64,000 nucleotides of DNA from positions 1 through 64,000 of IMG/VR virus record IMGVR_UViG_3300027770_001980, one strand, 5' to 3'. This document shows positions 11,166 through 45,914 of this stretch, piece by piece. The notes below the pieces were generated by a model. That model was not told the origin of the DNA and ran no database searches. It saw only the letters and a program-made list of their open reading frames with translations. Position numbers and translations under genes: made by a program. The first letter of the stretch is position 1; every line of letters begins with the position of its first letter.

Positions 11166-11174
11166 TTTTATTAT

Positions 11175-11250: not shown

Positions 11251-11258
11251 ATTTATAA

Positions 11259-11266: not shown

Positions 11267-11271
11267 TTTTT

Positions 11272-11991
11272 ATGAAAATTGCAATATTACTATCCGGACA
11301 ACCAAGATTTACTCAAGAGTTTCAATTATTTTTAGATAATTTAGTAGGTTATGATCAAGCAGATTGGTTTGTTTACATGACCAATAATAATCACGATCCT
11401 TTTAAAGATAATCGCATTAAAATTCCAGAGACCTGGATAAATTATGAAATAGATTGGGCCAGAGAGACTATAACAAGAAATCTTCCTCCTAACAATTTTC
11501 TCAGACGTTTCGAAATATCGAATGTACACGAACAAATTTTTCCAACTCTTCGAGAAGAACATCTATCTGGTAATCAAGCTATTTTCAAAATGCACTATAA
11601 TATATTTAAAACAAATCAATTAAGAGAAGAATATGAAACCTCTTATAATTTTAAATACGATGCAATTGTTAGAGCCCGCCCCGATGTTGGACTTAATCAG
11701 ATAATAGATCTTCGAAAATTTGATTTGTCGACCAGGGGAGTCTTTATGCCTTGCCCTTTTTATGGACACCCAGGGAGAGAGTCTAATGATTTGATTGGAT
11801 TTGGTAATTCGGAGGTCATGTCTATTTACAGTAATGCCTTACATCATTTCAAAGAATATAGTGATGCTGGAGAAATAGTTTGCCCTGAAACACTATTATC
11901 ACGGCACTTGATTACAAATAATGTATCACGTATAAAATCTGATTTTAGTCACATTTTTCGAACTCTGCCTTTAGATCCTAAATGGTTTTGA
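11272..11991 (+). CDS. glycosyltransferase-like protein, paralog 1
   Basis: MKIAILLSGQPRF...KYDAIVRARPD...NDLIGFG; start reassigned out of tRNA-Phe. Confidence 0.6.
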   Translation: MKIAILLSGQPRFTQEFQLFLDNLVGYDQADWFVYMTNNNHDPFKDNRIKIPETWINYEIDWARETITRNLPPNNFLRRFEISNVHEQIFPTLREEHLSGNQAIFKMHYNIFKTNQLREEYETSYNFKYDAIVRARPDVGLNQIIDLRKFDLSTRGVFMPCPFYGHPGRESNDLIGFGNSEVMSIYSNALHHFKEYSDAGEIVCPETLLSRHLITNNVSRIKSDFSHIFRTLPLDPKWF

Positions 11992-12010
11992 GTGTCTGAA
12001 CTAATTACAT

Positions 12011-12097
12011 GGAAGATAGAAGTGCCGGGCACTAAGCAACTTGGAAAGTTGTTCCACTCTGAAAGGGGTGACAGTTCGACTCTGTTATCTTCCTCCA
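12011..12097 (+). tRNA. tRNA-Ser(GGA)
   Basis: GCAAC-ttGGAaa-GTTGT, long variable arm, atypical D-arm. Confidence 0.8.
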
Positions 12098-12117
12098 ACA
12101 CACTAAAGGAGCATAAC

Positions 12118-12180
12118 ATGTTAGTAATAGGATTATTAGTAATCATGGGTATGCTCTATTTGATTATTAGAAAGTTATAA
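12118..12180 (+). CDS. 20-aa hydrophobic peptide
   Basis: AAGGAG RBS; MLVIGLLVIMGMLYLIIRKL*. Confidence 0.5.
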   Translation: MLVIGLLVIMGMLYLIIRKL

Positions 12181-12181
12181 T

Positions 12182-12257
12182 GGTAGAGTAGCATAGCGGC
12201 TAATGCACCAGCTTCATACGCTGTCGATCGTGGGTTCGAGTCCCACCTCTACTACCA
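12182..12257 (+). tRNA. tRNA-Met(CAT)
   Basis: CAGC-ttCATac-GCTG. Confidence 0.85.
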
Positions 12258-12262
12258 ATCAA

Positions 12263-12382
12263 TGTCGTTGTCGTCTAATGGTAGGACGCTTATAAAAGGT
12301 TATCCTGTTAAGGATACAGTCAGCACAATCAAATTCCATGTCAAGGAAGAGATCTGGGTTCGAATCCCAGCTGCGACCCCCA
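12263..12382 (+). ncRNA. tRNA-like RNA with branched anticodon domain (~120 nt)
   Basis: Acceptor, D-arm, T-arm and CCA present; the centre holds TATCC-TGTTAA-GGATA and TTCC-atGTCaa-GGAA hairpins. Confidence 0.65.
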
Positions 12383-12388
12383 GTTTAT

Positions 12389-12464
12389 GTACATGAGCCC
12401 GAAGATTGAGGGTACCGTTAATTGAGACGGCGAAAGGCGATTGAGATGATACCCATGTACGCCA
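12389..12464 (+). ncRNA. 76-nt tRNA-like RNA lacking a TPsiC loop
   Basis: Perfect GTACATG/CATGTAC + GCCA; GCCC/GGGT and CCGTT/GACGG arms. Confidence 0.55.
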
Positions 12465-12466
12465 AG

Positions 12467-12615
12467 TTTCGAGATAGACGTAGAGATCGAGTCCCCTGTA
12501 CGCTAGTGCCCTATTTCTTGAGCATGACACACCAGTAGCAGTATCGGGTCAAGCAAAACTCTCTCATACGAGACAAACCAATGAGTCCTTGAGAAAGATA
12601 GTTGGAGGCTCGAAA
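12467..12615 (+). ncRNA. unassigned structured RNA (~150 nt)
   Basis: TTTCGAG/CTCGAAA closure; CTTGA/TCAAG and CTCAT/ATGAG helices. Confidence 0.45.
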
Positions 12616-12623
12616 ACCTATAT

Positions 12624-12709
12624 GCTCTGGTGCAGGGAATTGGAAGACCGGCAACGTTGAGAACGTTGTGACCTAACAGGTGTGGGTTCGAGTCCCACCC
12701 AGAGCACCA
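12624..12709 (+). tRNA. tRNA-Leu(GAG)
   Basis: CAACG-ttGAGaa-CGTTG. Confidence 0.88.
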
Positions 12710-12713
12710 ATTT

Positions 12714-12787
12714 AGTTCCTTAGTTTAATGGCAGAACACTACCTCGACACGGTGACAATGAAAGTTCGATTCTTTCAGGAACTACCA
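12714..12787 (+). tRNA. tRNA-Val(GAC)
   Basis: TACC-tcGACac-GGTG (C33 variant). Confidence 0.8.
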
Positions 12788-12877
12788 TATATAAAAACAT
12801 ATTAGGCCCTCGGTCGTAGACTTGAGTTGCGGGTATAGTGCCTTCCAAGCCGTGGACTCGAATGTGTTTTTATATAT
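12787..12877 (+). repeat. inverted-repeat-bracketed cassette B4
   Basis: ATATATAAAAACATATT / AATGTGTTTTTATATAT (17 bp); cargo has tRNA-Gly-like GCGGGTATAGT and GC-ctTCCaa-GC. Confidence 0.75.
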
Positions 12878-12905
12878 GAAAGTTCGATTCTTTCAGGAAC
12901 TACCA
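12876..12905 (+). repeat. 30-bp direct repeat of the tRNA-Val 3' end
   Basis: ATGAAAGTTCGATTCTTTCAGGAACTACCA, identical to 12758-12787. Confidence 0.9.
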
Positions 12906-12906
12906 A

Positions 12907-12981
12907 CTCTCTATAGTTCAATGGATAGAACACATTCCTCCTAAGAATGGGATGCAGGTTCGATTCCTGCTGGAGAGACCA
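12907..12981 (+). tRNA. tRNA-Arg(CCT)
   Basis: CATTC-ctCCTaa-GAATG. Confidence 0.92.
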
Positions 12982-12993
12982 AATAAATATTAT

Positions 12994-13070
12994 GCCCCGT
13001 TACGCTAATTGGTAGTGCGGATTCTCTCAAAAGGAGTTGGCTGTCTGTTCGAATCAGACACGGGGTACCA
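12994..13070 (+). tRNA. tRNA-Leu(CAA), short variable arm
   Basis: ATTCT-ctCAAaa-GGAGT; 77 nt. Confidence 0.78.
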
Positions 13071-13075
13071 CTTAT

Positions 13076-13150
13076 CGGTCTTTAGTGAAATGGATATCAT
13101 CTTTGTCTTCGAAACAAAAGTTGTGGGTTCGATCCCTGCAAGACCGGCCA
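13076..13150 (+). tRNA. tRNA-Arg(TCG)
   Basis: TTTGT-ctTCGaa-ACAAA. Confidence 0.9.
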
Positions 13151-13154
13151 ATCT

Positions 13155-13228
13155 GCTCCTATAGGTAAATGGTATACCAGCACTTTGGTAAAGTGCAATT
13201 ACAAGTTCGATTCTTGTTAGGAGCACCA
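13155..13228 (+). tRNA. tRNA-Thr(GGT)
   Basis: GCACT-ttGGTaa-AGTGC. Confidence 0.9.
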
Positions 13229-13236
13229 AAAAAAAC

Positions 13237-13265
13237 TTGACACACCGACAGAAATACAGTATAAT
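13237..13265 (+). promoter_or_regulatory. sigma70 promoter (internal to array)
   Basis: TTGACA-17-TATAAT. Confidence 0.8.
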
Positions 13266-13330
13266 TACTACATAGACAGCAAACGATAGAGTTAGTTGTT
13301 GTGTGTTCATTAACAATACAAGTTGGTTTT

Positions 13331-13414
13331 GCGGGTGTGGTGGAATGGTATACACAGCAGACTTAAAATCTGCCGCTGAAAAGCATGCCGGTTCGAGTCC
13401 GGCCACCCGCACCA
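13331..13414 (+). tRNA. tRNA-Leu(TAA)
   Basis: GCAGA-ctTAAaa-TCTGC. Confidence 0.92.
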
Positions 13415-13518
13415 TATTGAAACACATTGTGGAGAGCACTGTGTAGATTGAGAAGGTTTGATTCCGACTCACTACATCACTCGGTATCCTGCGGCCGCAA
13501 CAGTGTGCTTCAATATGG
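13412..13518 (+). repeat. inverted-repeat-bracketed cassette B5
   Basis: CCATATTGAAACACATTGT / ACAGTGTGCTTCAATATGG; cargo TGTAG/CTACA helix with GGTTTGATTCC T-loop mimic. Confidence 0.75.
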
Positions 13519-13522
13519 TGTT

Positions 13523-13641
13523 ATATTAAAATATACTTTTCGTCTCCAGTAGCCCAAACCCGGGGGAATCGCATATTGAGAATGTGCATAGCACAACGGT
13601 ACAGCAAGCATAAGACACTTGTTGGAAGTATGTTTTAATAT
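13523..13641 (+). repeat. inverted-repeat-bracketed cassette B6
   Basis: ATATTAAAATATACTT / AAGTATGTTTTAATAT; cargo GCATATT/AATGTGC hairpin. Confidence 0.72.
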
Positions 13642-13647
13642 GATTCC

Positions 13648-13680
13648 CTGGCGTTCGTATAATGGATAATACAGGGGATT
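13648..13680 (+). pseudogene. 5' half of a split tRNA-Arg(TCT)
   Basis: CTGGCGT acceptor strand, D-arm, GGGGA-TT; its partner half is at 14447-14488. Confidence 0.8.
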
Positions 13681-13698
13681 TAGTATAAATAGATATAT

Positions 13699-13775
13699 GC
13701 GACTGTAGCTCAGTTGGATAGAGTACCCGGCTTCTACCCGGATTGTCGGGGGTTCGAATCCCTCCAGTCGCACCA
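13699..13775 (+). tRNA. tRNA-Arg(TCT), replacement copy inside the insertion
   Basis: CCGG-ctTCTac-CCGG, full cloverleaf. Confidence 0.88.
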
Positions 13776-13790
13776 TTTAGTAGAAAATGT

Positions 13791-14429
13791 ATGTATCAAA
13801 AACTAACAAACTGTAAGCATTGTAATATCTCTTTAGAGAGTATGAATGCCAACGAAAGGGCAAACCATTCGAGATGGTGTACATCAAACCCTAAACGGGT
13901 TGAATATGTAAATGCGCTGGCCAAGCATAGAGAAAATATTGTCGCTCCTCGAAATCAATTTGTTAAAGCAAAAGACGAGGGACGACCTGTTCCAAAAGGA
14001 ACAATGACCGGAAAACCCGGAACGATGTTAGGTAAGAAACATTCTCTGGAAACAAAGCAACATCTTAAAGAAAAAGCGTTAGCAAGCCCACATAGAAGAT
14101 TAGTTAGGTCCATTAGAAAATATACACAAAAGGATGGAACTATTGTTAATTTAGATTCTTCTTGGGAAGAAGCATTGGCAATTCGCCTTGATGAACTTAA
14201 TGTTAATTGGATCCGACCCAAGCCGATAAAATGGATAGATGACAATGGTATAACCCATAACTATTTTCCAGACTTTTATCTTGTTGATTTCGACGTATAT
14301 TTAGATCCAAAAAATCCTTATGCTATTAAGGCACAGGAAAGCAAAATAAAATGTTTGACAAAACAGATAAAAAATCTTATAATCATAAGAGGATTAGAAG
14401 AGTGTAAAAATTATACCCCTATAGTTTAA
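13791..14429 (+). CDS. putative homing endonuclease (NUMOD3-like repeat + PD-(D/E)xK domain)
   Basis: GKKHSLETKQHL; DSSWE...YFPDFYL...YLDPKN. Confidence 0.7.
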   Translation: MYQKLTNCKHCNISLESMNANERANHSRWCTSNPKRVEYVNALAKHRENIVAPRNQFVKAKDEGRPVPKGTMTGKPGTMLGKKHSLETKQHLKEKALASPHRRLVRSIRKYTQKDGTIVNLDSSWEEALAIRLDELNVNWIRPKPIKWIDDNGITHNYFPDFYLVDFDVYLDPKNPYAIKAQESKIKCLTKQIKNLIIIRGLEECKNYTPIV

Positions 14430-14488
14430 TGGTAAAACGGCGGATTTCTACTCCCTAAATAGCAGTTCGATTCTGTTACGCCGGACCA
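14415..14488 (+). pseudogene. chimeric tRNA: foreign 5' half + 3' half of Arg(TCT)
   Basis: 3' TCTAC-TCCCT...ACGCCGG-ACCA complements 13648-13680, not the adjacent ACCCCTAT...GGCGGATT. Confidence 0.75.
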
Positions 14489-14499
14489 AAGATTTTATT

Positions 14500-14589
14500 G
14501 CGAGCGAGACTTGGAGTCCGAGGGGTCTTATATGCCCTTTCCGCCAGATTAGCGGCTTTGAGAGAGTTCGATTCTCTCCGCTCGTACCA
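14500..14589 (+). tRNA. tRNA-Ile(TAT)-like with long variable arm
   Basis: GGGT-ctTATat-GCCC, short D-arm, extra CCGC-cagatta-GCGG hairpin. Confidence 0.65.
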
Positions 14590-14638
14590 CCTATCACAAT
14601 TAGGTTCTTTTGTTAAAATATCATATAATTAATATATT

Positions 14639-15340
14639 ATGAACAATGAAAAACATCAACCTATTACAGTGGTAGTGCCTACCATGTGGAGACATTCTCC
14701 ATTTTTAGATTTTGCACAGGACTTCTTAGAATTAAATGTAGTCGAACATTTAATCATCATCGACAATGATATCTCAAGAAGACCCAACCATCCGGTATTG
14801 ACCAATTCCAAAATAACTATTTTTGAATTTGGAAAAAATATATTTGTCAATCCTGCTTGGAACTTAGGAGTCAACAACAGCAAAACTAATATTGTTTGCA
14901 TATTGAATGATGATTTAAATTTTGATATCAGATTATTCAATAGAGTATCTAAGTTTATTAAACCTGATATGGGTGCAATAGGATTGAGTAACGGAATAGC
15001 AGAATTTGGACAAACAATTTTAACTGACGGAATGATCAATTTTGAACCATTTCATGGACAGATATGTGAAGGATTTGGTAATCTCATGTTTGTACATAAA
15101 TCTACATGGAAAGATATACCCGAAGGGTTGAATATCGCATATGGAGATAATTTCATTTTCGAACAAAATCTTTACAACAATCGAACAAACTATTTTATTG
15201 TTAATATGTTTCATCACCATGCAGCATCTACCACAGTTAAAGAAGTATTAAAAGATAAAGATGTGAAAGATGTTTTTTGGCTACGAGAAAGTCTTCTATA
15301 TAAAGACATCAAGGTCAAATTAATGAATAGAACATTTTAG
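14639..15340 (+). CDS. GT2-like glycosyltransferase
   Basis: VVVPTMW, IIDND, VNPAWNLG, LNDD, YGDNFI. Confidence 0.7.
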   Translation: MNNEKHQPITVVVPTMWRHSPFLDFAQDFLELNVVEHLIIIDNDISRRPNHPVLTNSKITIFEFGKNIFVNPAWNLGVNNSKTNIVCILNDDLNFDIRLFNRVSKFIKPDMGAIGLSNGIAEFGQTILTDGMINFEPFHGQICEGFGNLMFVHKSTWKDIPEGLNIAYGDNFIFEQNLYNNRTNYFIVNMFHHHAASTTVKEVLKDKDVKDVFWLRESLLYKDIKVKLMNRTF

Positions 15341-15350
15341 AAAGAATAGT

Positions 15351-15425
15351 GGGCTTTTAGCTTAATGGTAAAGCAGTCGACTCATAATCGATTGAGTGTA
15401 GGTTCAATTCCTACAAAGCCCACCA
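15351..15425 (+). tRNA. tRNA CAT (Ile2/lysidine-type or Met)
   Basis: GTCGA-ctCATaa-TCGAT; GGGC acceptor resembles Ile2. Confidence 0.82.
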
Positions 15426-15466
15426 TATCTCAAAGTTAGAGATAAATACTCTAACCGGAGCACGTA

Positions 15467-15895
15467 ATGTTAAAAGAATATACATGTAAAGATTGTGGTA
15501 AAGAAGGAAAAGAAAATTTTTATCAATATCGATATCAATGCAAATCTTGTTGGAATAAACGCACATATCAATCAAGTAGAGATAAATTAGATTTACTCAT
15601 ACACGAAAGAGGCGGAAAATGCGAAAGATGTGGATACAATAAATGCATGGATGCTTTACAGTGGCATCATATAGATCCTACAATTAAAGAGTTTGGAATA
15701 AGCAAACAACGAGGTGCATCGATAGAAGTATTACGAAAAGAAATTGATAAGTGTTCTTTATTATGTGCAAACTGTCATGTCGAGGTACATGCAGAAATGC
15801 GAAATAAAGGATATAAAGTTGTCAGAATTACCCATCCAGAATTTAAAGAAAGATATTTTTCTGGTAAGGGATTTTTAGATTTAATGCGGGTGTGA
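15467..15895 (+). CDS. HNH endonuclease
   Basis: CERCGYNKCMDALQWHHIDP...LLCANCHVEVH. Confidence 0.85.
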   Translation: MLKEYTCKDCGKEGKENFYQYRYQCKSCWNKRTYQSSRDKLDLLIHERGGKCERCGYNKCMDALQWHHIDPTIKEFGISKQRGASIEVLRKEIDKCSLLCANCHVEVHAEMRNKGYKVVRITHPEFKERYFSGKGFLDLMRV

Positions 15896-15972
15896 TGAAA
15901 TTGGTAGACTTCCGGTCCTTAGAAGTCCGGGTTCGAAAGAGCGTGCTGGTTCGAGTCCAGTCACCCGCACCA
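15886..15972 (+). tRNA. tRNA-Leu(TAG)
   Basis: ctTAGaa loop, long variable arm. Confidence 0.85.
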
Positions 15973-15979
15973 TTATAGG

Positions 15980-16008
15980 TTGACAACTTACCTACATAGT
16001 TGTATAAT
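15980..16008 (+). promoter_or_regulatory. sigma70 promoter
   Basis: TTGACA-17-TATAAT. Confidence 0.8.
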
Positions 16009-16029
16009 TAATTTTAATAAAAGGAAAGT

Positions 16030-16206
16030 ATGAAAACAACTGCAACATTTCGATTGAATAAGCGTTTCAAAACACTTATCTCTGCTATGCCATTTAAGAG
16101 CCAAGAACAACGTGACCATTTTCGTCACATGATGATCGAGGCACAGGTAGCAGCAAATACCATTGTCAAGAGTTCTAAGGACCGTAACAACAACCGAGGT
16201 GAATAA
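16030..16206 (+). CDS. hypothetical protein (58 aa)
   Basis: AAGGA RBS; MKTTATFRLNKRFK...RGE*; coupled to rpoZ. Confidence 0.65.
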   Translation: MKTTATFRLNKRFKTLISAMPFKSQEQRDHFRHMMIEAQVAANTIVKSSKDRNNNRGE

Positions 16207-16430
16207 TGAAAACTCCAGATTTTGTTAACAGTCTTGACACCGACAAGTGTGTGTCTAACATTGGTAGCCGATTTGATTTAGTTATTGTTGCTGCTATTCG
16301 TGCCCGCGAGTTGAATCGTGGTCATAGAAAAATGGTCAATAGTCCAAATGGTAATATTGTTAGTGCTCTGCAAGAAATCGAAGCAGGACACATTGGGCGT
16401 GATTACTTGCGAAAGGTTCGTCGACCATGA
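16206..16430 (+). CDS. rpoZ: RNA polymerase omega subunit homolog
   Basis: SRFDLVIVAAIRAREL...IVSALQEIEAGHI matches the RpoZ family core. Confidence 0.8.
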   Translation: MKTPDFVNSLDTDKCVSNIGSRFDLVIVAAIRARELNRGHRKMVNSPNGNIVSALQEIEAGHIGRDYLRKVRRP

Positions 16431-16603
16431 GCAAAGGTTCCAGACAGCGTCCAACAGATCTAAATAAGTTTCGATCAAACTACGATGCTATCTTCCGAAA
16501 GCCTTCTCCAAAAGAAGTAGATGATGCTCAAGCAGAAGATGAAGCATTCAAGAGAGTTGAAGAACAGCAATCACAAGTTCGAGACAGTGACCAAGGCGGC
16601 TAA
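16427..16603 (+). CDS. hypothetical protein (58 aa)
   Basis: MSKGSRQRPTDLNKFRSNYDAIFRK...GG*; ATGA overlap. Confidence 0.6.
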   Translation: MSKGSRQRPTDLNKFRSNYDAIFRKPSPKEVDDAQAEDEAFKRVEEQQSQVRDSDQGG

Positions 16604-16616
16604 TAAATAGAGATGC

Positions 16617-16690
16617 GCCCTACTAGTACAATGGTAGTACACTGGTTTTGTAATCCTGTGATGGCAGTTCGATTCTGTCGTAGGGCACCA
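16617..16690 (+). tRNA. tRNA-Thr(TGT), copy 2
   Basis: ttTGTaa loop; weak anticodon stem. Confidence 0.8.
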
Positions 16691-16698
16691 AGAGATAT

Positions 16699-16772
16699 GC
16701 GGGGTTCGTAAAATGGTATTACCTTAGCCTTCCAAGCTAAAGTCAGGAGTTCGATTCTCCTACCCCGCTCCA
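16699..16772 (+). tRNA. tRNA-Gly(TCC), copy 2
   Basis: TTAGC-ctTCCaa-GCTAA. Confidence 0.92.
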
Positions 16773-17041
16773 AGTCTATGCAATATGTTTAGTGCTCTAT
16801 TACGCAGCCGTTGAGTAAACTCCGACTCTGATAACACGCCTTTAGCAAGATTACACTTGCGACATGTTACTTGTAAGTTATTGAAATCAGTGGTGCCACC
16901 TTGTGATTCTGGAATGACATGATCCATATGTATTTCAGAGTCTGACAAATCGTCATCACAATAAACACAGTAGAGGCCATCGCGTTCAATAACTCTACGG
17001 CGTAGATTTAATGGTATGCGTTCTTTTTTTTGTAGCATCAA
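16760..17041 (-). CDS. HNH endonuclease
   Basis: RDGLYCVYC...MDHVIPESQGG...NLQVTCRKCNLAKG. Confidence 0.85.
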   Translation of the reverse strand: MMLQKKERIPLNLRRRVIERDGLYCVYCDDDLSDSEIHMDHVIPESQGGTTDFNNLQVTCRKCNLAKGVLSESEFTQRLRNRALNILHRLGAG

Positions 17042-17076
17042 AAATATTTAGTAAATAGAGTTTTAATGTATTAAGA

Positions 17077-17151
17077 GCCTGGTTAGCTCAGGGGGAGAGC
17101 GGCTGCTTTACACGCAGCGGGTCGGCGGTTCGAAACCGTCACCGGGTACCA
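17077..17151 (+). tRNA. tRNA-Val(TAC)
   Basis: GCTGC-ttTACac-GCAGC. Confidence 0.92.
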
Positions 17152-17159
17152 GTTTTATT

Positions 17160-17891
17160 TTAAATCCATCTTGGATCCAATGGTAAATCTCTCAGAGAAT
17201 TATCAAAATTTCCGGGTGTATAAGAAATTTTGTTTGAATTTAAATGATGTCCAAGAATAGCTTCTGGACCAAAATCCAATACTTGTTTTTCATATTCTTC
17301 AAGATGATTTATGACATCCGAATAGATTGTCATAACATCAGAGTTTCCAAATGCAAATTGATCGTTTGACTGAGAAACCTCTCCATACCATCTATTGCCA
17401 GGCATGATAACAACTTGAGAACTTAGATCATAATTGTTGATATTTAATTCAATTGGTAATCCAATATCAGTTCGTGTTCTAATTACTGCATCATATTTAA
17501 AATTATTCTCTTGTTCGTAGTTTACTCTTAACTGATTAACCTTGTATAGATTATAATACATATTGAATATATTATCGGTACCTATACCTCGATAATCTCG
17601 AACAGGAGGCCATTGTTGAAGATGAACATCGGATATTTCAAATTTTTTAAGAAAATTGTTGTTTGGTAAATTTTCAATTATTTTGGATGTAGCCCATTCA
17701 ATGTCATAATTAATCCATTTATCGTGAGGTGGAATAATATGAGAATTTTTTATTTTTAAGTCTTCTCTGGTAGGACTGTTGGTAAGATACACAAACCAAT
17801 CTGCCTGATTGTAACCTTTTAAATTATTTAGAAAATTTCTGAGGTCGCCGGTGAATCTCGGTTCTCCAGGAAGTAGTATAGCTATTCTCAT
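17160..17891 (-). CDS. glycosyltransferase-like protein, paralog 2
   Basis: MRIAILLPGEPRFTGD...KYDAVIRTRTD...NDQFAFG. Confidence 0.6.
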   Translation of the reverse strand: MRIAILLPGEPRFTGDLRNFLNNLKGYNQADWFVYLTNSPTREDLKIKNSHIIPPHDKWINYDIEWATSKIIENLPNNNFLKKFEISDVHLQQWPPVRDYRGIGTDNIFNMYYNLYKVNQLRVNYEQENNFKYDAVIRTRTDIGLPIELNINNYDLSSQVVIMPGNRWYGEVSQSNDQFAFGNSDVMTIYSDVINHLEEYEKQVLDFGPEAILGHHLNSNKISYTPGNFDNSLRDLPLDPRWI

Positions 17892-17922
17892 AAATAATAT
17901 TTATGTTAGCATATAACGATGA

Positions 17923-18159
17923 TTGATTGATTATTTATTGGCTTTTTTTGCTATCTTCTTCACTGACATCTTTTATACATATTACTTGAAGGCTGTGCAT
18001 GAAGAGCAAACACTAAAGGCCAGTTGCTGGGCAACGATAGTCTATGTGGTTGCGGCAGTGGCAATTATAGAGTATAATAGTAATCATATGTTATTGATTC
18101 CAGCGGCAGCGGGTGCATTTTGTGGCACTTGGGTTGGAATGAAAATTAGAAAGAGATAA
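17923..18159 (+). CDS. small membrane protein
   Basis: About three hydrophobic segments. Confidence 0.6.
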   Translation: MIDYLLAFFAIFFTDIFYTYYLKAVHEEQTLKASCWATIVYVVAAVAIIEYNSNHMLLIPAAAGAFCGTWVGMKIRKR

Positions 18160-18160
18160 T

Positions 18161-18239
18161 CTCCGGTTCGCCTAACCTGGTTATGGCACCTCGTTTGGGA
18201 CGAGGAATAATGTGAGTTCGAATCCCACACTGGAGACCA
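18161..18239 (+). tRNA. tRNA-Pro(TGG), copy 2
   Basis: CCTCG-ttTGGga-CGAGG. Confidence 0.88.
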
Positions 18240-18246
18240 AAGAACA

Positions 18247-18410
18247 GCGGATAAGTTACATTATCCAGTATGAGTCGCTAAGGTAGGTACCTAATCCTTA
18301 GGGCAAGTAATAGTACACAATAGCGATGTAACAGGAAGTAGTGATCTACTCACCGGGACGGGCCTCAAAACGAATCCCACCAAGTTAACTCGCCATGGCA
18401 CACGGCGTAC
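18247..18410 (+). ncRNA. unassigned structured RNA
   Basis: GGATAA/TTATCC, TAAGG/CCTTA, AGTAG/CTACT, GGGA/TCCC and CGCC/GGCG hairpins between two tRNAs. Confidence 0.45.
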
Positions 18411-18438
18411 AATAGGACAAATTGTGTGGCACGAATAT

Positions 18439-18512
18439 TGCGGGATAGAGTAACGGTAATTCAGAAGTCTCATAAGCTTCAAATCTTGGTTCGATTCCAG
18501 GTCCCGCTTCCA
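18439..18512 (+). tRNA. tRNA-Met(CAT), possibly initiator-like
   Basis: GAAGT-ctCATaa-GCTTC; 1:72 mismatch, but lacks the GGG/CCC anticodon stem. Confidence 0.8.
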
Positions 18513-27899: not shown

Positions 27900-28130
27900 A
27901 TGACATTTAAAACTCACCAAAGTCGGATACGAACTATTAAACCAGGTGATCCGCGATTTAACATTGTGGATAAATTTGTCACCGCTCCTCGAGCAGGATT
28001 TGAGATCAGTCAACGATGTCCGGAAAATTATCGTGACCTATTACAGGAATGTATTGGGCATGGTTGGATCAAACCTGTTGCTCATGTGCATGAGCGAGAA
28101 TTACTTTTTATGGGACTCAGTCAAGAATGA
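27900..28130 (+). CDS. hypothetical protein
   Basis: ORF after promoter. Confidence 0.6.
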   Translation: MTFKTHQSRIRTIKPGDPRFNIVDKFVTAPRAGFEISQRCPENYRDLLQECIGHGWIKPVAHVHERELLFMGLSQE

Positions 28131-28981
28131 ATATGCAGATGCCAGGCACCATGGGAGGTGCTAAACTAAACTTTGATAGACCAAAATACGATAGTATAGG
28201 AATTATAGGTCTAGGATTTGTGGGCACTGCCATCGAACGTTCTTTAGAATTTGATACAAAACTTGTCATCATGGATCCTGCCAAAGGCCATAATGCTACA
28301 TATAAAGATCTAATGGAATGTAGTGGAATCTTTGTATGTGTACCAACTCCGCAAGACGACGACGGTACTTGCGATACCAGTATAGTGGAGGAAATCCTAA
28401 ACAATTTATATGCTTGTAGATATCAAGGTGTCATTATCAGTAAATGCACAGCACCACCCGATCAGTATGACCTATGGAATCTACAACATCCCAATTTAGT
28501 TCATGCTCCAGAATTCCTTACTGCTGCCAATGCCAATGATGATTATGCGGTGGGCAAATTTGCTTTTGTTGGTGGCCGGGTTCCTGCTTATGTACGAGAG
28601 GCAGAAAGAATCATCCGCATGTCACAACGCAGTTTAGAAACCGTTGTTCATTGTACCGCAGGTGAAGCGGCAATGGCCAAATATGCCATCAATACGTTTA
28701 TGGCCACTAAAGTTGTGTTTATGAACGAGATACAAGAACTATGTTCTAAAACTGGCGTAGACTATAATCGGGTTGCTCATATGGTTGTACAAGACAATAG
28801 GATTGGTAAAAGCCATATGCAGGTGCCAGGGCCAGATGGTGCTTATGGATTTGGAGGTGCATGTTTCCCCAAAGATACCAGTGCCTTGTTGAAATATGCC
28901 GAACAGAATGGTTCCGTAATGAATGTTCTTGATGCAGCGGTAAAGAAAAATACAATACTTAGGTTGACGGAACCTAAATAA
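28127..28981 (+). CDS. UDP-glucose/GDP-mannose 6-dehydrogenase family protein
   Basis: GLGFVG, CVPTP, PEFL, AKYAINTFMATK, GFGGACFPKD. Confidence 0.9.
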   Translation: MNMQMPGTMGGAKLNFDRPKYDSIGIIGLGFVGTAIERSLEFDTKLVIMDPAKGHNATYKDLMECSGIFVCVPTPQDDDGTCDTSIVEEILNNLYACRYQGVIISKCTAPPDQYDLWNLQHPNLVHAPEFLTAANANDDYAVGKFAFVGGRVPAYVREAERIIRMSQRSLETVVHCTAGEAAMAKYAINTFMATKVVFMNEIQELCSKTGVDYNRVAHMVVQDNRIGKSHMQVPGPDGAYGFGGACFPKDTSALLKYAEQNGSVMNVLDAAVKKNTILRLTEPK

Positions 28982-29011: not shown

Positions 29012-29815
29012 TTGACAGAAGAAAATAGAGTGTTTAAACCAGATCCGTTGTTATCAAACGAGTCTGAAGAGTTTGTTCCGTTAGAAGGACAAAGAATTTA
29101 TGTGAAGAAGAAAGATGCTCCCCAAGGTACATATCTTAGCACAGCCTTGCGAGAAAGGATGAAAACAGATGGTAAGAGATTCTGGGCAGGAGATAATGTC
29201 AGTGACTATATTACCGAATTGGACAAGGAACACCTGATCAACGAAGCAACAGCAGCATTTGAAAAGGTCTTAGATACATTGCTAATCGATCGTGAAAATG
29301 ATCCTAACAGCAAGGGCACGGCACGACGTTTGGCCAAGATGTATTTCAATGAAATCATGGCTGGTAGATATGAACCGGGTCCGGATGCAACCGCATTTCC
29401 GAATGATAGTGATGACAGATATGAAGGCATGTTAGTAGTTCGTAGTGAACTGAAATCCATGTGTAGTCATCATCACCAACCTGTTAGTGGTGTGGCTTAT
29501 ATCGGAATATTGGCCGCACAGAAGTTAATAGGATTAAGTAAGTATACACGCATCGCACAATGGTGTGCTAGACGCGGTACTCTACAAGAAGAACTTTGTA
29601 ACGACATTGCTCGTGAAATCATGAAAGCCACAGACAGCCAAAATGTTGCAGTCTATATCCAGGCCACTCATGGTTGCTGTGAGAACCGTGGTATAATGGC
29701 ACATAGTAGTCTAACCCAAACTACTGTATTGCGCGGCGCATTTAAAGATGATGCCAGCGTTAAGAAAGAGTTCTTTGACAATATCAAACTACAGCAAGAA
29801 TTCGCTCCGAGATAA
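29012..29815 (+). CDS. folE: GTP cyclohydrolase I
   Basis: SMCSHHHQP, GLSK, RRGTLQEEL, ATHGC. Confidence 0.95.
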   Translation: MTEENRVFKPDPLLSNESEEFVPLEGQRIYVKKKDAPQGTYLSTALRERMKTDGKRFWAGDNVSDYITELDKEHLINEATAAFEKVLDTLLIDRENDPNSKGTARRLAKMYFNEIMAGRYEPGPDATAFPNDSDDRYEGMLVVRSELKSMCSHHHQPVSGVAYIGILAAQKLIGLSKYTRIAQWCARRGTLQEELCNDIAREIMKATDSQNVAVYIQATHGCCENRGIMAHSSLTQTTVLRGAFKDDASVKKEFFDNIKLQQEFAPR

Positions 29816-41371: not shown

Positions 41372-41956
41372 ATGTTAGTACCAATGGTAGTAGAGAAGAC
41401 AGGTCAAGGCGAACGAGCCTTTGACATTTTTAGTAGATTATTGAACGAAAGAATTGTATTCCTAAATGGAGGAGTGGACGATCACAGTAGCAATCTTGTA
41501 GTGGCACAGATGCTACATTTAGAGAGTGCCGATAGTGAGAAGGATATCCACTTTTATATCAACAGCCCCGGTGGCGTGATTACCAGTGGCATGGCTATCT
41601 ACGATGTCATGCAATTTGTCAAACCAGATGTATGCACTTATGTCATGGGTCAAGCCTGTAGCATGGGCAGTTTCTTGGCACAGGCAGGAGCTAAAGATAA
41701 GCGTTATATCTTACCACATGCTCGCCATATGATACACCAACCCAGTGGTGGTGCTCGTGGTATGCAGAGTGACATTGAGATCCAATACAAAGAAATCACA
41801 CAGATGAAGAAGATGTTGACAGACTTGTATGTTCAACATAATACGGCAGGCAAGACCTATGCTGACTTCGAGCGTGATATGGATCGTGATACATTTATGA
41901 GTGCTGAAGAAGCATTGGCATATGGATTGGTTGACAAAATTATCGATAAGCGTTAA
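41372..41956 (+). CDS. clpP: ATP-dependent Clp protease proteolytic subunit
   Basis: [33 protein letters not shown]. Confidence 0.95.
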
Positions 41957-41975
41957 ACTTACGATAAATATCAAC

Positions 41976-42035
41976 AGCGGTCTCCGAGCATCAACCCGCT
42001 ATACAAATTCTGCTGCCTATGCTATAACATAGGAG
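41976..42035 (+). promoter_or_regulatory. putative riboswitch-like leader of queD
   Basis: AGCGG/CCGCT stem, loop AGCA can pair with TGCT; CCTATG/CATAGG hairpin buries the SD AGGAG. Confidence 0.45.
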
Positions 42036-42042
42036 AAAAAGC

Positions 42043-42549
42043 ATGTCAACATTACAACCTGTACAATATAAGTACACCAGCACCAAAGAATACATCGACG
42101 CATTTCCATGCGCCTATCGACAATGGAGAGCCGATAGTCATTGCAATATGAATCACGGTTATTCATTTAGTATGAAGTTTTACTTTGGAACCAACGAGTT
42201 AGATGTCCGTAATTGGGCGGCAGACTATGGAGGATTGAAGGAACTTAAAAAAATCCTCGAAGATCAATTTGATCATACTACATTGGTCGCTTACGATGAT
42301 CCAGAACTCGAGTTCTATAAAGAAATGGAACGCCGCAAGTTAGCCAAACTTACAATCCTACCAAGATTAGGTTGTGAGAGTCTGGCAGACATGCTGTACA
42401 AGTATGTAAATGGTGTTTATATTCCAGACTACTGGGGTGAAGGTGAGAGTAAGCGTCTATGGTGCTATCGCGTAGAAGTTCGCGAGACACAGGCTAATAT
42501 GGCTTTCCGTGAAGGACATCGTGAGTGGAATGAGGATCTGTTTGAATGA
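42043..42549 (+). CDS. queD: 6-carboxytetrahydropterin synthase (PTPS/QueD)
   Basis: AHRQ-like CAYRQW, SHCNMNHGYS, DYGGLK, FDHT, VEVRET. Confidence 0.85.
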   Translation: MSTLQPVQYKYTSTKEYIDAFPCAYRQWRADSHCNMNHGYSFSMKFYFGTNELDVRNWAADYGGLKELKKILEDQFDHTTLVAYDDPELEFYKEMERRKLAKLTILPRLGCESLADMLYKYVNGVYIPDYWGEGESKRLWCYRVEVRETQANMAFREGHREWNEDLFE

Positions 42550-42818
42550 ACGATAAAGAAAAAGAAGTAATGGACATTCTTCAAGAGGAATGTGCCGAAG
42601 TGATCCAAGCGGTTAGTAAATGTAGCCGCTTTGGTATCGACAATTACAAACCCGGCAAACCCTTAACCAACAGAGAGCACCTTGAAGAAGAACTCGGTGA
42701 CCTGTTGGCTATGGTTGATATCATGCTGGAACAAGGCATTGTAAGTATGGCCAAGTTAGATGAAGCCAAAGCAAATAAAAAACACAAACTCAGGAAATGG
42801 TCTACCATTTATGACTAA
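42546..42818 (+). CDS. MazG-like pyrophosphatase
   Basis: [11 protein letters not shown]...LEEELGDL. Confidence 0.75.
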
Positions 42819-43740
42819 AAAAGTATTAGTAACAGGTGGGGCTGGTTTCTTAGGAAGCCATCTTTGTGATAGATTAGTAGCACAGGGTCATCATGTTCTA
42901 TGTGTTGACAACTACTTTACGGGTAGTAAGAAAAACATTGAACATCTGTTGGATCATAAGAACTTCGAAGTGATCCGACAAGACATTTGTATTCCACTAT
43001 ATGTCGAAGTAGATGAGATTTACAATCTCGCTTGTCCAGCAAGTCCACAGCATTATCAGCACGATCCAATCCAAACAATGAAAACATCAGTTATTGGGGC
43101 TTTCAATATGCTGGGTTTGGCCAAACGTACCGGTGCTAAGATTCTACAGGCCAGTACAAGTGAGTGTTATGGTGATCCAACTGTGCATCCACAACCTGAA
43201 GAATATTGGGGTAACGTGAATCCTGTAGGAATACGTAGTTGTTACGATGAAGGTAAACGTGCTGCTGAAACATTGTTTATGGACTATCACCGTAAACATA
43301 ATGTCGATACTCGAATCATGCGTATCTTCAATACCTACGGTCCGAGGATGGCAGAAGGTGACGGCCGAGTAGTCAGTAACTTCATTGTGCAGGCTCTGCG
43401 TGGTGAAGATATCACCATTTACGGTGACGGAAGTCAAACTCGCAGTTTCTGTTACTATGAAGATAACTTAGATGGTATGATGGCGCTAATGGCGAGTGAT
43501 TATCATGACCCAGTTAACATCGGCAATCCTGATGAGTTTACCATAAAAGAACTGGCCGAAGCTGTAGTTTATATGATCAAAAGCCCCAGTAAAATCATAT
43601 ATTTGCCCTTGCCACAGGATGATCCAAAACAAAGAAAACCCGATATCGCCAGAGCGAAAGAGATTTTAAATTGGGAACCCTCGGTACTGTTAGCAATTGG
43701 ATTGGATAAAACGATTGACTATTTCCGTGAAATCGTGTAA
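42811..43740 (+). CDS. UDP-glucuronate decarboxylase-like NAD-dependent epimerase/dehydratase
   Basis: [50 protein letters not shown]. Confidence 0.92.
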
Positions 43741-44082: not shown

Positions 44083-44841
44083 TTAAAGAATTTTATTTTT
44101 ACATTGGTTACCGTGCCATCTTTTATACATAGACGGACTTGCTAGTTTGTTACAGTGTCCGCATTTAATCTTAGGAATATTTTTCAATTTTTGTTTATGT
44201 TCTTCGGATAATTTTTTACCTTTTAATTTTTCTGATATTGCTTTCTTATGATCTTCTGATTTTAATATCCCCTTATTGTAAGAATGCCCGGCATTTTTAT
44301 TAGATATTAATTTTTTAGATTCGTCTGAATGAGTCTTTCCAAACATAAAATTATTTTCACCCGAATTAGATTTAGAAATTTTTTGTTTATGGGCATCTGT
44401 TAACACTTTTCCAGAATTCCATGGTTGTTTTCCTAAGTGAGCATTAGACATTCTTTGTCTAGACTCAAGTGAATGAAATTTTCCATACATTGGATTCCCT
44501 GATCTGGACATAGCCATAGACTGTTCGTTTGCAAATATTTTCCTCGAGTTCTCATACAACTTTGATCTATATCTATTTTGATAAGGATTGTTAAGATTTG
44601 ATAGCGCATTGAGCGCAAAAATCATCGATCTTTTATTTTTTCCAAAAGTAATTTTAGTTAATAATAGATGGCAAATAAAATGTTCTTTGGCAGTTAGGTC
44701 TACTAAATTTTCTTTATTGTTTGACCCTCCCATTGACCTTGGAATAATATGATGTGATTCAACATATCCGTCGATAACTCTTGACTTTGCCCTATATATG
44801 ATGTTATAATAATATTTGAAATACTTATTTTCGACGAACAT
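44083..44841 (-). CDS. HNH homing endonuclease with NUMOD3 repeats
   Basis: ESHHIIPRSMGG.N...NLVDLTAKEHFICH; GKTHSDESKK repeats. Confidence 0.9.
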   Translation of the reverse strand: MFVENKYFKYYYNIIYRAKSRVIDGYVESHHIIPRSMGGSNNKENLVDLTAKEHFICHLLLTKITFGKNKRSMIFALNALSNLNNPYQNRYRSKLYENSRKIFANEQSMAMSRSGNPMYGKFHSLESRQRMSNAHLGKQPWNSGKVLTDAHKQKISKSNSGENNFMFGKTHSDESKKLISNKNAGHSYNKGILKSEDHKKAISEKLKGKKLSEEHKQKLKNIPKIKCGHCNKLASPSMYKRWHGNQCKNKIL

Positions 44842-45914
44842 TGCAATCTCCCTGTGTGTTTATTTATACTAACGAAGTCCTACTTGTTTACAAAATGACA
44901 ATCAAAAAAATTGGGTTTGCTTGCAAAATTTCAGAATTTAATTCTAAAAATGAAGTAGTATCTATCCCAGAATATAATTCTAGAAGCACTACAGTCTCTT
45001 GGTTAAATAGACAGAGTAAAGATGTTGCTGAAACAAAATTGTGGGAATTAATGGAACACAATATTGAAGCGGCTAAAAAGGCGGTAGAATATGTTGGAAA
45101 TTTGGAAAAAAGTCTTAGGTGTTTTCGCCTTAGTAGCGATATGCTGCCTGTTTATACCCAGTCTGATTGGAGTTATTTCTGGCGTAGGAATGATGTTCGC
45201 GACTATTGTGATCGCAATCTTCTCGTTGTTGGGGATAGTGCTCGTAGCAATAATGTACGCCTTAGCTTTCATCCTGGGCAGTTCACTGTTCTTGCTTCTA
45301 TTAATCCCGGTATTGTTGACAGGTCTATAGATGAGTTCGAATATCACGCCGATCTCGCCCGCTGGATGGGTTTTGGAAAATCGTTCCAAGATTTCAAAAT
45401 CAACGTCCACATATCGGGTAAAGAAGGCCCTGATGGTATCCGCCGCGCCTACAACCGACTTAGCACCGAAGCCCGTAATTGTATTACGATTGAAAACGAA
45501 GAGAACGCATGGGGATTAAATGATTGTCTTACACTTACTGATATCTTACCTATCGTCCTTGATGTCCATCATCATTGGATCAACTCGGGAGAATATATTT
45601 CCCCTAATGACCCGCGTGTTCAACAAGTTATTAATAGTTGGAGGGGTGTTCGCCCTACTATGCATTACAGTGTTAGCCGCGAAGATATACTCCCAGGCTT
45701 TTCCACTGTTGATCGCCCAGAGTTGGAGTTATTGCTAGAAGATGGATACAAAAAGCAGAAACTCAGAGCACATTCTGATTTCTACTGGAATACAGCAGTG
45801 AACGAATGGGCACTGAGCTTTTTGGATCGATTCGACATCATGGCAGAGAGTAAAGGCAAGAATTTAGCCAGCTTCGCATTGCACGAGCAGGCTAAACAAT
45901 TAGGCCTTCTGTGA
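44841..45914 (-). CDS. uvsE: UV-damage endonuclease
   Basis: IGFACK, FRLSSD, RLSFHPGQF, TIENEE, LDVHHH, MHYS, HSD. Confidence 0.9.

What the first reader, a model, noticed from the sequence alone, without database searches (positions are those of the whole stretch)
41976..42045. preQ1-I-like pseudoknot and SD-sequestering hairpin upstream of queD
Seen: a 5-bp P1 (AGCGG/CCGCT), a 15-nt loop starting with U and ending AAC, an A-rich linker, loop AGCA pairing with TGCT, then CCTATG/CATAGG hiding AGGAG. Known: class I preQ1 riboswitches have this topology and control que genes. The match is partial, so the ligand could be preQ0/preQ1, a pterin or a protein.
Basis: partly seen in the sequence, partly recalled or inferred. 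Interest (0 to 1): 0.6.

Follow-up and report, generated by a model that had tools for sequence, protein, structure and literature searches.

The report
Phage queD leader pseudoknot, riboswitch-like
The 70 bases in front of this giant phage's queD-like gene fold into a small RNA pseudoknot that is conserved, with compensating base changes, in hundreds of related freshwater phages; it looks like a new relative of the preQ1 riboswitch that controls a gene for making modified guanine.

Summary
Alone it is not convincing: the fold energy z-score is -1.41, and no Rfam family, including preQ1-I, II and III, matches even at E<=10. Comparison settles it. 195 related loci from uncultured jumbo phages gave 149 distinct sequences of the same motif.

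- **P1:** pairs in 100% of cells, and three of its five pairs show compensatory changes.
- **P2:** this pseudoknot helix pairs in 85-88% of cells and covaries at 3-4 of 4 positions.
- **Unpaired bases:** about ten are invariant, including the C just before the 3' strand of P1.

There is one copy per genome. It lies directly upstream of a QueD-like gene in 188 of the 195 loci, and in six more before one inserted ORF that precedes queD. These genes fall into three subfamilies only 38-39% identical to each other. The usual cluster is FolE-[motif]-QueD-(MazG)-QueE, with no QueC or TGT found.

In all three kinds of expression platform, the P2-3' strand is also the strand that masks the ribosome-binding site. 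I therefore infer that ligand binding turns translation ON, the reverse of known preQ1 switches.

My best reading is a new preQ1-I-like riboswitch candidate. Its ligand is untested; a 7-deazaguanine or a pterin is most likely.

The parts
41931..41970 (+). Promoter-like elements just upstream of the aptamer: TTGACA-17-TAAACT (41931-41959) and GATAAATA (41963-41970)
   Evidence: scores the sigma-70-like site 10/12. In 86% of 148 distinct upstream regions a TAAATA, TATAAT or TAAGTA hexamer ends mostly 5-11 nt before P1. Function is inferred, not shown.
41976..41980 (+). P1 5' strand AGCGG
   Evidence: Pairs with 41996-42000. 100% of 225 cells are paired. Observed variants are AU<->UA, GC<->UA/CG and CG<->UA/AU.
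41981..41986 (+). L1 (UCUCCG). The first three nt are N-C-U in the family, followed by a spacer of variable length.
   Evidence: CU at positions 2-3 is present in >=90% of sequences.
41987..41990 (+). P2 5' strand (AGCA; GGCA, GGCG, GGUG, GGCU or GGGC in relatives)
   Evidence: Covaries with the tail.
41991..41995 (+). L2 (UCAAC), ending in invariant C41995 next to P1-3'. This is the position of the ligand-specifying C in preQ1-I.
   Evidence: The C is invariant in the QueD-anchored alignments A2 and A3. The preceding base is U 83%, C 11%, A 5%. Comparison with PMC11625349.
41996..42000 (+). P1 3' strand CCGCT
42001..42013 (+). L3 AUACAAAUUCUGC. It is A-rich and then carries the conserved YUCUGC. 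A42003, A42005, A42007, U42009, C42010 and C42013 are invariant.
   Evidence: Invariant columns. Conserved in all three platform types.
42014..42017 (+). P2 3' strand UGCC in the family register. The alternative register in this sequence is UGCU 42011-42014. It overlaps the first two bases of the anti-SD strand.
   Evidence: and for the overlap with the masking strand.
42016..42033 (+). SD-sequestering hairpin CCUAUG / loop CUAUAA / CAUAGG
   Evidence: Present in the minimum-energy fold and in 104 of 149 distinct family sequences. A few lineages show compensatory variants, such as CCUAUA/UAUAGG and CUCUAUU/AAUAGAG.
42031..42045 (+). Shine-Dalgarno AGGAG (42031-42035) and start codon ATG (42043-42045)
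42043..42549 (+). QueD-like T-fold protein (PTPS family), 168 aa, with the motif CxxxHGY
   Evidence: Pfam PF01242, 55 bits. phrog_2389 'QueD-like', 1.8e-34. NCBIfam QueD scores 33 bits against a cut-off of 89. It is the only PTPS gene in the genome.
42546..42818 (+). MazG-like NTP pyrophosphohydrolase. Its start overlaps the queD stop, so the two are probably co-translated.
   Evidence: MazG follows QueD in 30 related loci.
29012..29815 (+). GTP cyclohydrolase I (FolE), the first enzyme of the same pathway. Here it lies 12 kb away; in many relatives it sits directly upstream of the motif.

Best explanation
Window 41976-42035 encodes the 5' leader of the queD-like mRNA. It folds into an H-type pseudoknot aptamer built like a class I preQ1 riboswitch:
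- a 5-bp P1;
- a loop carrying the 5' strand of P2;
- an invariant C next to the 3' strand of P1;
- an A-rich L3;
- the 3' strand of P2 in the tail.

I propose that it binds a small planar metabolite of the GTP-to-7-deazaguanine pathway that has a guanine-like face. The candidates are CDG, preQ0, preQ1, 7-deazaguanine, or a pterin intermediate such as H2NTP or CPH4.

The 3' strand of P2 (UGCC) is also the start of the strand that masks the ribosome-binding site. Here that is CC pairing with GG of the SD. Forming the pseudoknot should therefore free the SD and turn translation of queD (and the overlapping mazG, and queE in relatives) ON.

Shown: the structure, its conservation, its gene association and the strand overlap. 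Inferred: ligand binding, the identity of the ligand and the ON direction.
For: Structure:
- P1 is 100% paired, with 3/5 pairs compensatory.
- P2 is 85% paired on an unfitted alignment and 88% on a CM-fitted alignment of 97 sequences, where all four pairs are compensatory.
- Cognate loop/tail duplexes average -5.04 kcal/mol, against -3.88 +/- 0.21 for permuted pairs; 0 of 2000 permutations reached the observed value.

Conserved unpaired bases: about ten are invariant.

Specific association:
- My covariance model finds one copy in the own genome (54.6 bits, E 2e-16).
- It finds one strong copy in each of five 95-100% complete relatives.
- A QueD-like ORF follows the motif directly in 188 of 195 loci, in three subfamilies only 38-39% identical. 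tblastn places a QueD-like gene downstream in 193 of 194.
- Where another ORF is inserted, QueD follows it.

Pathway context:
- Relatives have FolE-[motif]-QueD-(MazG)-QueE.
- The own genome has FolE and a QueE-like gene.

Resemblance to preQ1-I: UC or AC before P1-3', an A-rich L3 and H-type topology (PMC11625349).

Platform: in all three platform types the P2-3' strand has probability 0.60-0.75 of pairing with the SD-to-AUG window in unconstrained folds. Imposing P1+P2 raises SD exposure from 0.31 to 0.53, with no case of decrease.

Promoter: promoter-like hexamers end mostly 5-11 nt before P1.
Against: - No ligand has been tested.
- No Rfam preQ1 model matches.
- L1 and L3 differ from every preQ1-I type.
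- ON control of a biosynthetic gene by its own end product would be illogical, so either the ligand is a precursor or other signal, or the direction is wrong.
- The fold-based ON argument is partly built in, because blocking a strand can only expose its partner. The effect on whole-RBS accessibility is small (0.47 to 0.54).
- In the window itself P2 is weak: 3 bp plus an A.C mismatch, or a slipped 4-bp register.
- G.U versus A.C counts in P2 do not by themselves prove RNA-level selection (14 versus 23).
- In the main type, part of L3 and the hairpin loop also match a sigma-70 promoter. Some of the sequence conservation may therefore be at the DNA level.
Confidence: 0.6

Rival explanations
1. 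It is a protein-binding translational operator. The pseudoknot and its conserved single-stranded bases are recognised by a phage protein (QueD itself, or a RegA- or gp32-style repressor), which sets how much QueD is made. No small molecule is involved.
For: Phage translational operators are often small hairpins or pseudoknots; this rests on established knowledge of T4 gene 32 and regA and was not tested here. The evidence for structure, conservation and RBS overlap fits this equally well. No known riboswitch model matches.
Against: The RNA core stays nearly constant while the downstream protein diverges to 38-39% identity in three subfamilies. The layout and the invariant C before P1-3' copy a known metabolite aptamer. 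No candidate binding protein was identified.
Confidence: 0.17
2. It is a true preQ1-I riboswitch, a divergent 'type IV'. It binds preQ1 or preQ0 in the classical pocket and represses queD when the host's 7-deazaguanine pool is full.
For: A 5-bp P1 with G-C pairs at the top, an invariant C preceded by U (83%) or A, an A-rich L3, a 4-bp P2, and a que-pathway gene downstream.
Against: RF00522 and the other preQ1 models give no hit at E<=10. L1 lacks the UU motif. L3 is about twice as long, with an extra invariant YUCUGC. P2-3' is not the SD, so the known OFF mechanism cannot operate as described. These phages lack QueC, so preQ0 and preQ1 are not their own products.
Confidence: 0.15
3. Conservation is mainly at the DNA level. 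The region is a promoter cluster: a late-type TAAATA element, then TTTACA-N17-TATAAT. The inverted repeats are operator or terminator remnants, and no RNA switch exists.
For: 94 of 104 distinct main-type sequences carry a 9-11/12 match to a sigma-70 promoter whose -35 lies in L3 and whose -10 lies in the hairpin loop. Upstream hexamers are conserved.
Against: A promoter does not explain the compensatory changes in two interleaved helices. It does not explain the invariant spacer bases AAAYUCUGC. It does not explain why the same core is conserved in the 44 sequences of the other two platform types, which have no such promoter. No terminator-like U-run is present. The window's own copy lacks the -10 T6.
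Confidence: 0.05

Closest known systems
preQ1-I riboswitch (Rfam RF00522; types I-III, e.g. B. subtilis queC, T. tengcongensis, E. coli)
   Same: A small H-type pseudoknot. A 5-bp P1 closed by G-C pairs. A cytosine directly before P1-3', preceded by U (type I) or A (types II and III). An A-rich L3 placed to lie in the P1 minor groove. A 3-4 bp P2 formed with the 3' tail. It sits in the leader of a queuosine/7-deazaguanine pathway gene and has a translational expression platform (PMC11625349).
   Different: No covariance-model match. L1 is N-C-U plus a 3-9 nt spacer, not UU. The loop is 11-19 nt. L3 is 13 nt with an additional invariant YUCUGC. P2-3' is the anti-SD or anti-AUG strand rather than the SD, so the predicted logic is ON. 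It was found only in uncultured freshwater jumbo phages, which have FolE, QueD and QueE but no QueC.
Other H-type pseudoknot riboswitches (SAM-II, SAM-V, preQ1-II, guanidine-III, fluoride)
   Same: Pseudoknot topology, with the loop-tail helix coupled to the ribosome-binding site.
   Different: None of their Rfam models matches. The gene context is unrelated to SAM, guanidine or fluoride.
Phage 7-deazaguanine DNA-modification clusters (FolE/QueD/QueE, with or without QueC, DpdA, DpdL, MazG; Hutinet et al. 2019, 2023)
   Same: The regulated genes belong to this gene set. The window's QueD-like protein is 44-52% identical to the QueD of ACP17, vB_DshS-R5C, Me-ZS1 and others. FolE+QueD+QueE without QueC, with a MazG-like neighbour, recalls the gene set of Cellulophaga phage phiST (PMC10516641).
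   Different: That paper does not contain the word riboswitch. In four cultured phages the queD gene abuts its upstream gene, leaving no room for a leader. No DpdA/TGT was detected here with Pfam.

Membership tests
preQ1-I riboswitch (RF00522) | Scores at or above the Rfam gathering threshold of the family covariance model | tested here: not met
   No preQ1-I, -II or -III hit at gathering threshold on the window. None at E<=10 on 41900-42120 or on six short loci from six genomes.
preQ1-I riboswitch (RF00522) | H-type pseudoknot: a 5-bp P1 and a P2 formed between the hairpin loop and the 3' tail | tested here: met
   P1 100% and P2 85-88% paired, with compensatory changes and a permutation test.
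preQ1-I riboswitch (RF00522) | Specificity cytosine directly 5' of P1-3', preceded by U (type I) or A (types II and III) | tested here: met
   The C is invariant. The preceding base is U in 124, C in 17 and A in 8 of 149 sequences. The criterion is taken from PMC11625349.
preQ1-I riboswitch (RF00522) | UU motif on top of P1-5' (types I and III), with a short L1 | tested here: not met
   L1 begins UCU, CCU or ACU and runs 3-9 nt before P2.
preQ1-I riboswitch (RF00522) | A short A-rich L3 (about 6-8 nt) leading straight into P2-3', which contains SD bases (OFF switch) | tested here: not met
   L3 is 13 nt with an added invariant YUCUGC. P2-3' overlaps the anti-SD or anti-AUG strand, not the SD.
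preQ1-I riboswitch (RF00522) | Binds preQ1 or preQ0 | not testable with these tools
   Needs in-line probing or ITC.
Riboswitch (generic cis-regulatory metabolite sensor) | A conserved structured 5' leader with covariation and conserved unpaired nucleotides, tied to genes of one pathway across divergent genomes | tested here: met
   149 distinct sequences. Three QueD subfamilies. FolE/QueD/QueE context. One copy per genome.
Riboswitch (generic cis-regulatory metabolite sensor) | An expression platform whose alternative pairing overlaps the aptamer | tested here: met
   The P2-3' strand pairs with the SD-to-AUG window with probability 0.60-0.75 in three different platform types. This is a thermodynamic model only.
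Riboswitch (generic cis-regulatory metabolite sensor) | Direct ligand binding that changes gene expression | not testable with these tools
QueD (CPH4 synthase, TIGR03367) for the downstream gene | Scores above the NCBIfam equivalog cut-off and carries the CxxxHGH zinc/catalytic motif | tested here: not met
   33 bits against a cut-off of 89.25. The motif reads C-N-M-N-H-G-Y. It does belong to Pfam PTPS and to PHROG 'QueD-like', and it sits in FolE/QueE clusters. It is therefore QueD-like, with the enzyme activity unverified.

The most novel reading that the evidence does not exclude
This is a new riboswitch class, not merely a preQ1 variant. It reuses the preQ1-I scaffold to sense a different compound: CDG, 7-deazaguanine, or a pterin precursor such as H2NTP or CPH4. 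It switches translation ON, giving jumbo phages metabolite-level control over 7-deazaguanine hypermodification of their DNA. In most members a sigma-70 promoter embedded in the leader provides an unregulated route that bypasses the aptamer.
Probability: 0.3. Interest if true: 0.85.

Novelty: new variant of a known kind. Interest (0 to 1): 0.72.

Why it matters
- Few riboswitches are known in phages, and I found none reported for the 7-deazaguanine DNA-modification pathway.
- This motif has more than 190 sequenced examples, clean covariation and a 50-nt core. It is easy to synthesise and test against a short list of ligands.
- If it binds something other than preQ1, it adds a ligand to one of the smallest aptamer folds. 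It would also give the first ON-type member of that fold.
- It also gives a way to study how uncultured freshwater jumbo phages time or tune guanine replacement, and it marks that phage clade.

Tried and rejected
- **Single-sequence folding:** not significant, and the minimum-energy fold uses an alternative pairing, CAGCGG/CUGCUG. That pairing is not kept when P1 varies (my reading of the sequences), so I rejected it.
- **Rfam:** only noise hits (freshwater-2 13.7 bits, frameshift elements, msr).
- **Terminator of clpP:** rejected. There is no U-run and no terminator call, and the motif travels with queD whatever gene lies upstream.
- **G.U versus A.C counts in P2, as a test of RNA-level and strand-specific selection:** not discriminating (14 versus 23). 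Most A.C cases are the window-type AGCA/UGCC, where a slipped register exists.
- **Motif in cellular genomes:**
  - A strict pattern over 185,579 species genomes hit only one MAG.
  - My covariance model over 151 genomes of that MAG's order gave five weak hits (22-27 bits). The two I inspected lie inside a coding region and at a terminator-like hairpin between convergent genes. Two others have stems with almost no loop. None matched an Rfam family. I took them as false.
- **Motif in GenBank phages:** blastn of a consensus-like member found nothing. Four cultured-phage queD genes have no leader.
- **Second copies:** none in the own genome. There is one weak extra hit in G005 (18 bits) and one degenerate copy in L094.
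- **QueC and TGT/DpdA:** not found with Pfam models. Distant DpdA3-type proteins could escape these models.
- **The look-up of sequencing runs:** I did not try another route, so there is no expression or 5'-end evidence.
- **Literature:** six searches found no description of this motif.

Full report
**What is in the window**

The stretch 41957-42042 is the intergenic region between a ClpP gene (41372-41956) and a 168-aa PTPS-fold, QueD-like gene (42043-42549). The stop of the QueD-like gene overlaps the start of a MazG-like gene (42546-42818).

The window is the first 64 kb of a 221-kb IMG/VR virus record, estimated 62% complete. It carries 39 tRNA genes, so it is a jumbo phage.

- AGCGG 41976-80 / CCGCT 41996-42000
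- a 15-nt loop
- AGCA 41987-90 / TGCT 42011-14
- CCTATG 42016-21 / CATAGG 42028-33, over AGGAG 42031-35

**One sequence alone is not convincing**

The RNA fold of 41957-42060 has z = -1.41. It prefers CAGCGG/CUGCUG to the proposed P1.

Rfam 15 gives only tRNAs at gathering threshold. At E<=10 on 41900-42120 it gives only noise and no preQ1 class. The same holds for short loci cut from five near-complete relatives.

**Comparative evidence**

I collected related sequences in two ways:
- A search with the QueD-like protein in IMG/VR found at least 578 loci. The best 80 have 84-96% protein identity.
- A DNA pattern for the core found at least 120 further viral contigs, and a single record among 185,579 species genomes. 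That record is a 183-kb contig of a Haliscomenobacter MAG.

Parsing gave 195 loci and 149 distinct motif sequences.

*P1.* On a QueD-anchored MAFFT alignment of 46 sequences, P1 is paired in 100% of 225 cells. Three of its five pairs change on both sides: AGCGG/CCGCU becomes ACCGG/CCGGU, UGCGG/CCGCA, AUCGG/CCGAU, AGUGG/CCACU or AGAGG/CCUCU. No shuffle in 500 reached the observed values on four of the five measures; six did on the count of pairs changed on both sides. Slid controls pair in 41-60% of cells.

*P2.* The loop-tail helix covaries. Observed strand pairs include GGCG/CGCC, GGUG/CACC, GGCU/AGCC, GGGC/GCCC, GGCA/UGCC, GACA/UGUC, GGCAU/AUGCC, GACAU/AUGUC, GACGC/GUGUC and ACGAC/GUCGU. Three tests support it:
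- On an unfitted alignment of the 4-bp class, P2 is 85% paired with three of four pairs compensatory. No shuffle in 500 reached this, and slid controls pair in 38-67% of cells.
- On a CM-fitted alignment of 97 sequences, P2 is 88% paired with all four pairs compensatory.
- A cognate-versus-permuted test on 45 loop/tail classes gave -5.04 against -3.88 +/- 0.21 kcal/mol, with 0 of 2000 permutations as low.

*Register.* The family register puts P2-3' directly after an invariant CUGC.

*Invariant unpaired bases*. The list also includes the G-C pairs that close P1:
- G41979 and G41980
- C41995, C41996 and C41997
- A42003, A42005 and A42007
- U42009, C42010, C42013 and C42017

**Specificity and gene context**

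A covariance model of the core (R1) finds exactly one copy in the own genome, at 54.6 bits. It finds one strong copy in each of five 95-100% complete 330-354 kb relatives.

The ORF directly downstream is QueD-like in 188 of 195 loci. These fall into three subfamilies that are only 38-39% identical; tblastn places a QueD-like gene downstream in 193 of 194 loci. In six more loci one ORF is inserted and QueD follows it:
- a cupin
- a 243-aa ORF with no Pfam match
- a 293-aa ORF with no Pfam match

The common cluster in relatives is FolE-[motif]-QueD-(MazG)-QueE. In the window's phage these genes are dispersed: FolE at 29012-29815, and a QueE-like gene at genome position 90889-91731.

Pfam models found neither QueC nor TGT/DpdA in the own record or in the five complete relatives. 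Each complete genome has a single PTPS-family gene.

The protein has CxxxHGY rather than the QueD signature CxxxHGH, and it scores below the NCBIfam QueD cut-off. However, it is 44-52% identical to the QueD of cultured phages that carry bona fide 7-deazaguanine clusters. FolE+QueD+QueE without QueC, with a MazG-like neighbour, recalls the gene set of Cellulophaga phage phiST, whose DNA carries 7-deazaguanine (PMC10516641).

**Comparison with preQ1-I**

According to the review PMC11625349, class I preQ1 riboswitches share these features:
- They are H-type pseudoknots.
- P1-3' is preceded by UC (type I) or AC (types II and III).
- L3 is A-rich and contacts the P1 minor groove.
- P2 buries SD bases in the gene-off state.

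Here the C is invariant. It is preceded by U in 83%, C in 11% and A in 5% of sequences; the window has A. L3 starts A-rich and P2 has 4 bp.

The differences are:
- L1 is N-C-U plus a spacer.
- L3 is 13 nt with an extra invariant YUCUGC.
- No preQ1 covariance model scores.

The motif works like preQ1-I in its layout, but it fails the family's membership tests.

**Expression platform and direction**

Three platform types occur:
- *Main type, CC UAUG...CAUAGGAG* (104 distinct sequences, including the window). The two C's that end P2-3' are the bases that pair with GG of the SD.
- *G(C/U)CAUUG...CAAUGGC.* The P2-3' strand pairs across the start codon.
- *AUGUCGUCAAACUU...GAUGGCA.* UGUCGUC pairs with GAUGGCA, again across the start codon.

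In unconstrained ensembles the P2-3' strand has probability 0.60-0.75 of being paired to the SD-to-AUG+3 window in all three types. Imposing P1+P2 raises SD exposure from 0.31 to 0.53, with 65 of 141 sequences rising by more than 0.2 and none falling. Whole-RBS exposure rises only from 0.47 to 0.54.

I infer that pseudoknot formation competes with RBS masking, so a ligand would switch translation ON. This is an inference from topology and a crude energy model, and the direction is partly built into the constraint. An ON switch fits a precursor or signal ligand better than an end product.

**Transcription**

In the window a sigma-70-like site (TTGACA-17-TAAACT, 41931-41959) and GATAAATA (41963-70) precede P1. 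In 86% of distinct upstream regions a TAAATA, TATAAT or TAAGTA hexamer ends mostly 5-11 nt before P1. This would place the 5' end at the aptamer.

The main platform type also embeds a near-consensus sigma-70 promoter. Its -35 (TTTACA or TATACA) is at the P1-3'/L3 junction and its -10 (TATAAT or TAAAAT) is in the hairpin loop, in 94 of 104 sequences. None of the 44 sequences of the other two types has it. It could give aptamer-less, unregulated transcripts. It cannot explain the covariation, or the conservation of the core in the other types.

**Distribution**

- blastn of a consensus-like member against 50,697 GenBank phage records found nothing.
- Four cultured-phage queD genes abut their upstream genes.
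- R1 hits in 151 genomes of the MAG's order were confined to two contigs of that MAG. The five other, weak hits look false: one lies in a coding region, one is a terminator-like hairpin, and two have stems with almost no loop.
- Six literature searches found no description of the motif.

**Verdict**

The structure is strongly supported by covariation. The element is a phage-specific, preQ1-I-like pseudoknot leader of queD.

| Claim | My estimate |
|---|---|
| A structured cis-regulatory RNA exists here | about 0.95 |
| It is a metabolite riboswitch | about 0.6 |
| The ligand is a 7-deazaguanine or pterin-type compound | about 0.5 |
| It acts ON | about 0.5 |

I did not use read laying or the large protein searches. 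No step needed referral.

Noticed in passing
window 42000-42027; relatives e.g. L059:2919-2994: A near-consensus sigma-70 promoter is embedded in the leader. Its -35 (TTTACA or TATACA) is at the P1-3'/L3 junction, followed by 17-18 nt, and its -10 (TATAAT or TAAAAT) is in the SD-hairpin loop. It occurs in 94/104 main-type sequences and 0/44 of the other platform types. The window's own copy is weak (TATACA-17-TATAAC). It could produce transcripts that bypass the aptamer.
   Followed up: partly
L094:5-56 and L094:68-997: A second, degenerate copy of the motif (P1 ACCAG/CUGGU, tail CUUCGC, 31 bits) lies in front of a 309-aa class-I methyltransferase-like ORF. It is 1 kb upstream of the normal copy that precedes queD.
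   Followed up: partly
L066:2115-2996 (also L174, L181); L131:6409-6750; L142:4432-5163: ORFs are inserted between the motif and queD: a 293-aa protein with no Pfam hit, a cupin, and a 243-aa protein with no Pfam hit. The leader seems to tolerate, or attract, gene insertions downstream.
   Followed up: partly
window 42043-42549: The QueD-like protein has CxxxHGY instead of the QueD signature CxxxHGH, and Y/F where the first zinc histidine is expected. This holds in all three subfamilies. It is the only PTPS-fold gene in each complete genome.
   Followed up: partly
window 5650-18509: An array of 39 tRNA genes, all on the + strand.
   Followed up: no
window 28127-28981, 29012-29815, 42811-43740: Sugar-nucleotide genes flank the deazaguanine genes. 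A UDP-glucose dehydrogenase lies directly before FolE, and a UDP-glucuronate decarboxylase-like epimerase lies directly after MazG. UXS-FolE-QueD order recurs in some relatives.
   Followed up: no
window 44083-44841 (-) and 44892-45914 (+): A NUMOD3-repeat, homing-endonuclease-like ORF lies next to a UvdE UV-endonuclease gene.
   Followed up: no
L090 (G006:C1:164385-164434) and L217 (G006:C58:25260-25307): A MAG labelled Haliscomenobacter sp. carries the motif on two contigs (183 kb and a smaller one). These are probably phage contigs binned with the MAG. This is either a hint that the host is in Saprospiraceae/Bacteroidota or a binning artefact.
   Followed up: partly
G000:C1:89922-90827 (-) next to QueE-like 90889-91731 (+): A second radical-SAM protein (301 aa, weak viperin/SPASM-like hits) is divergently placed beside the QueE-like gene. 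A TIGR02466-family protein lies downstream.
   Followed up: no
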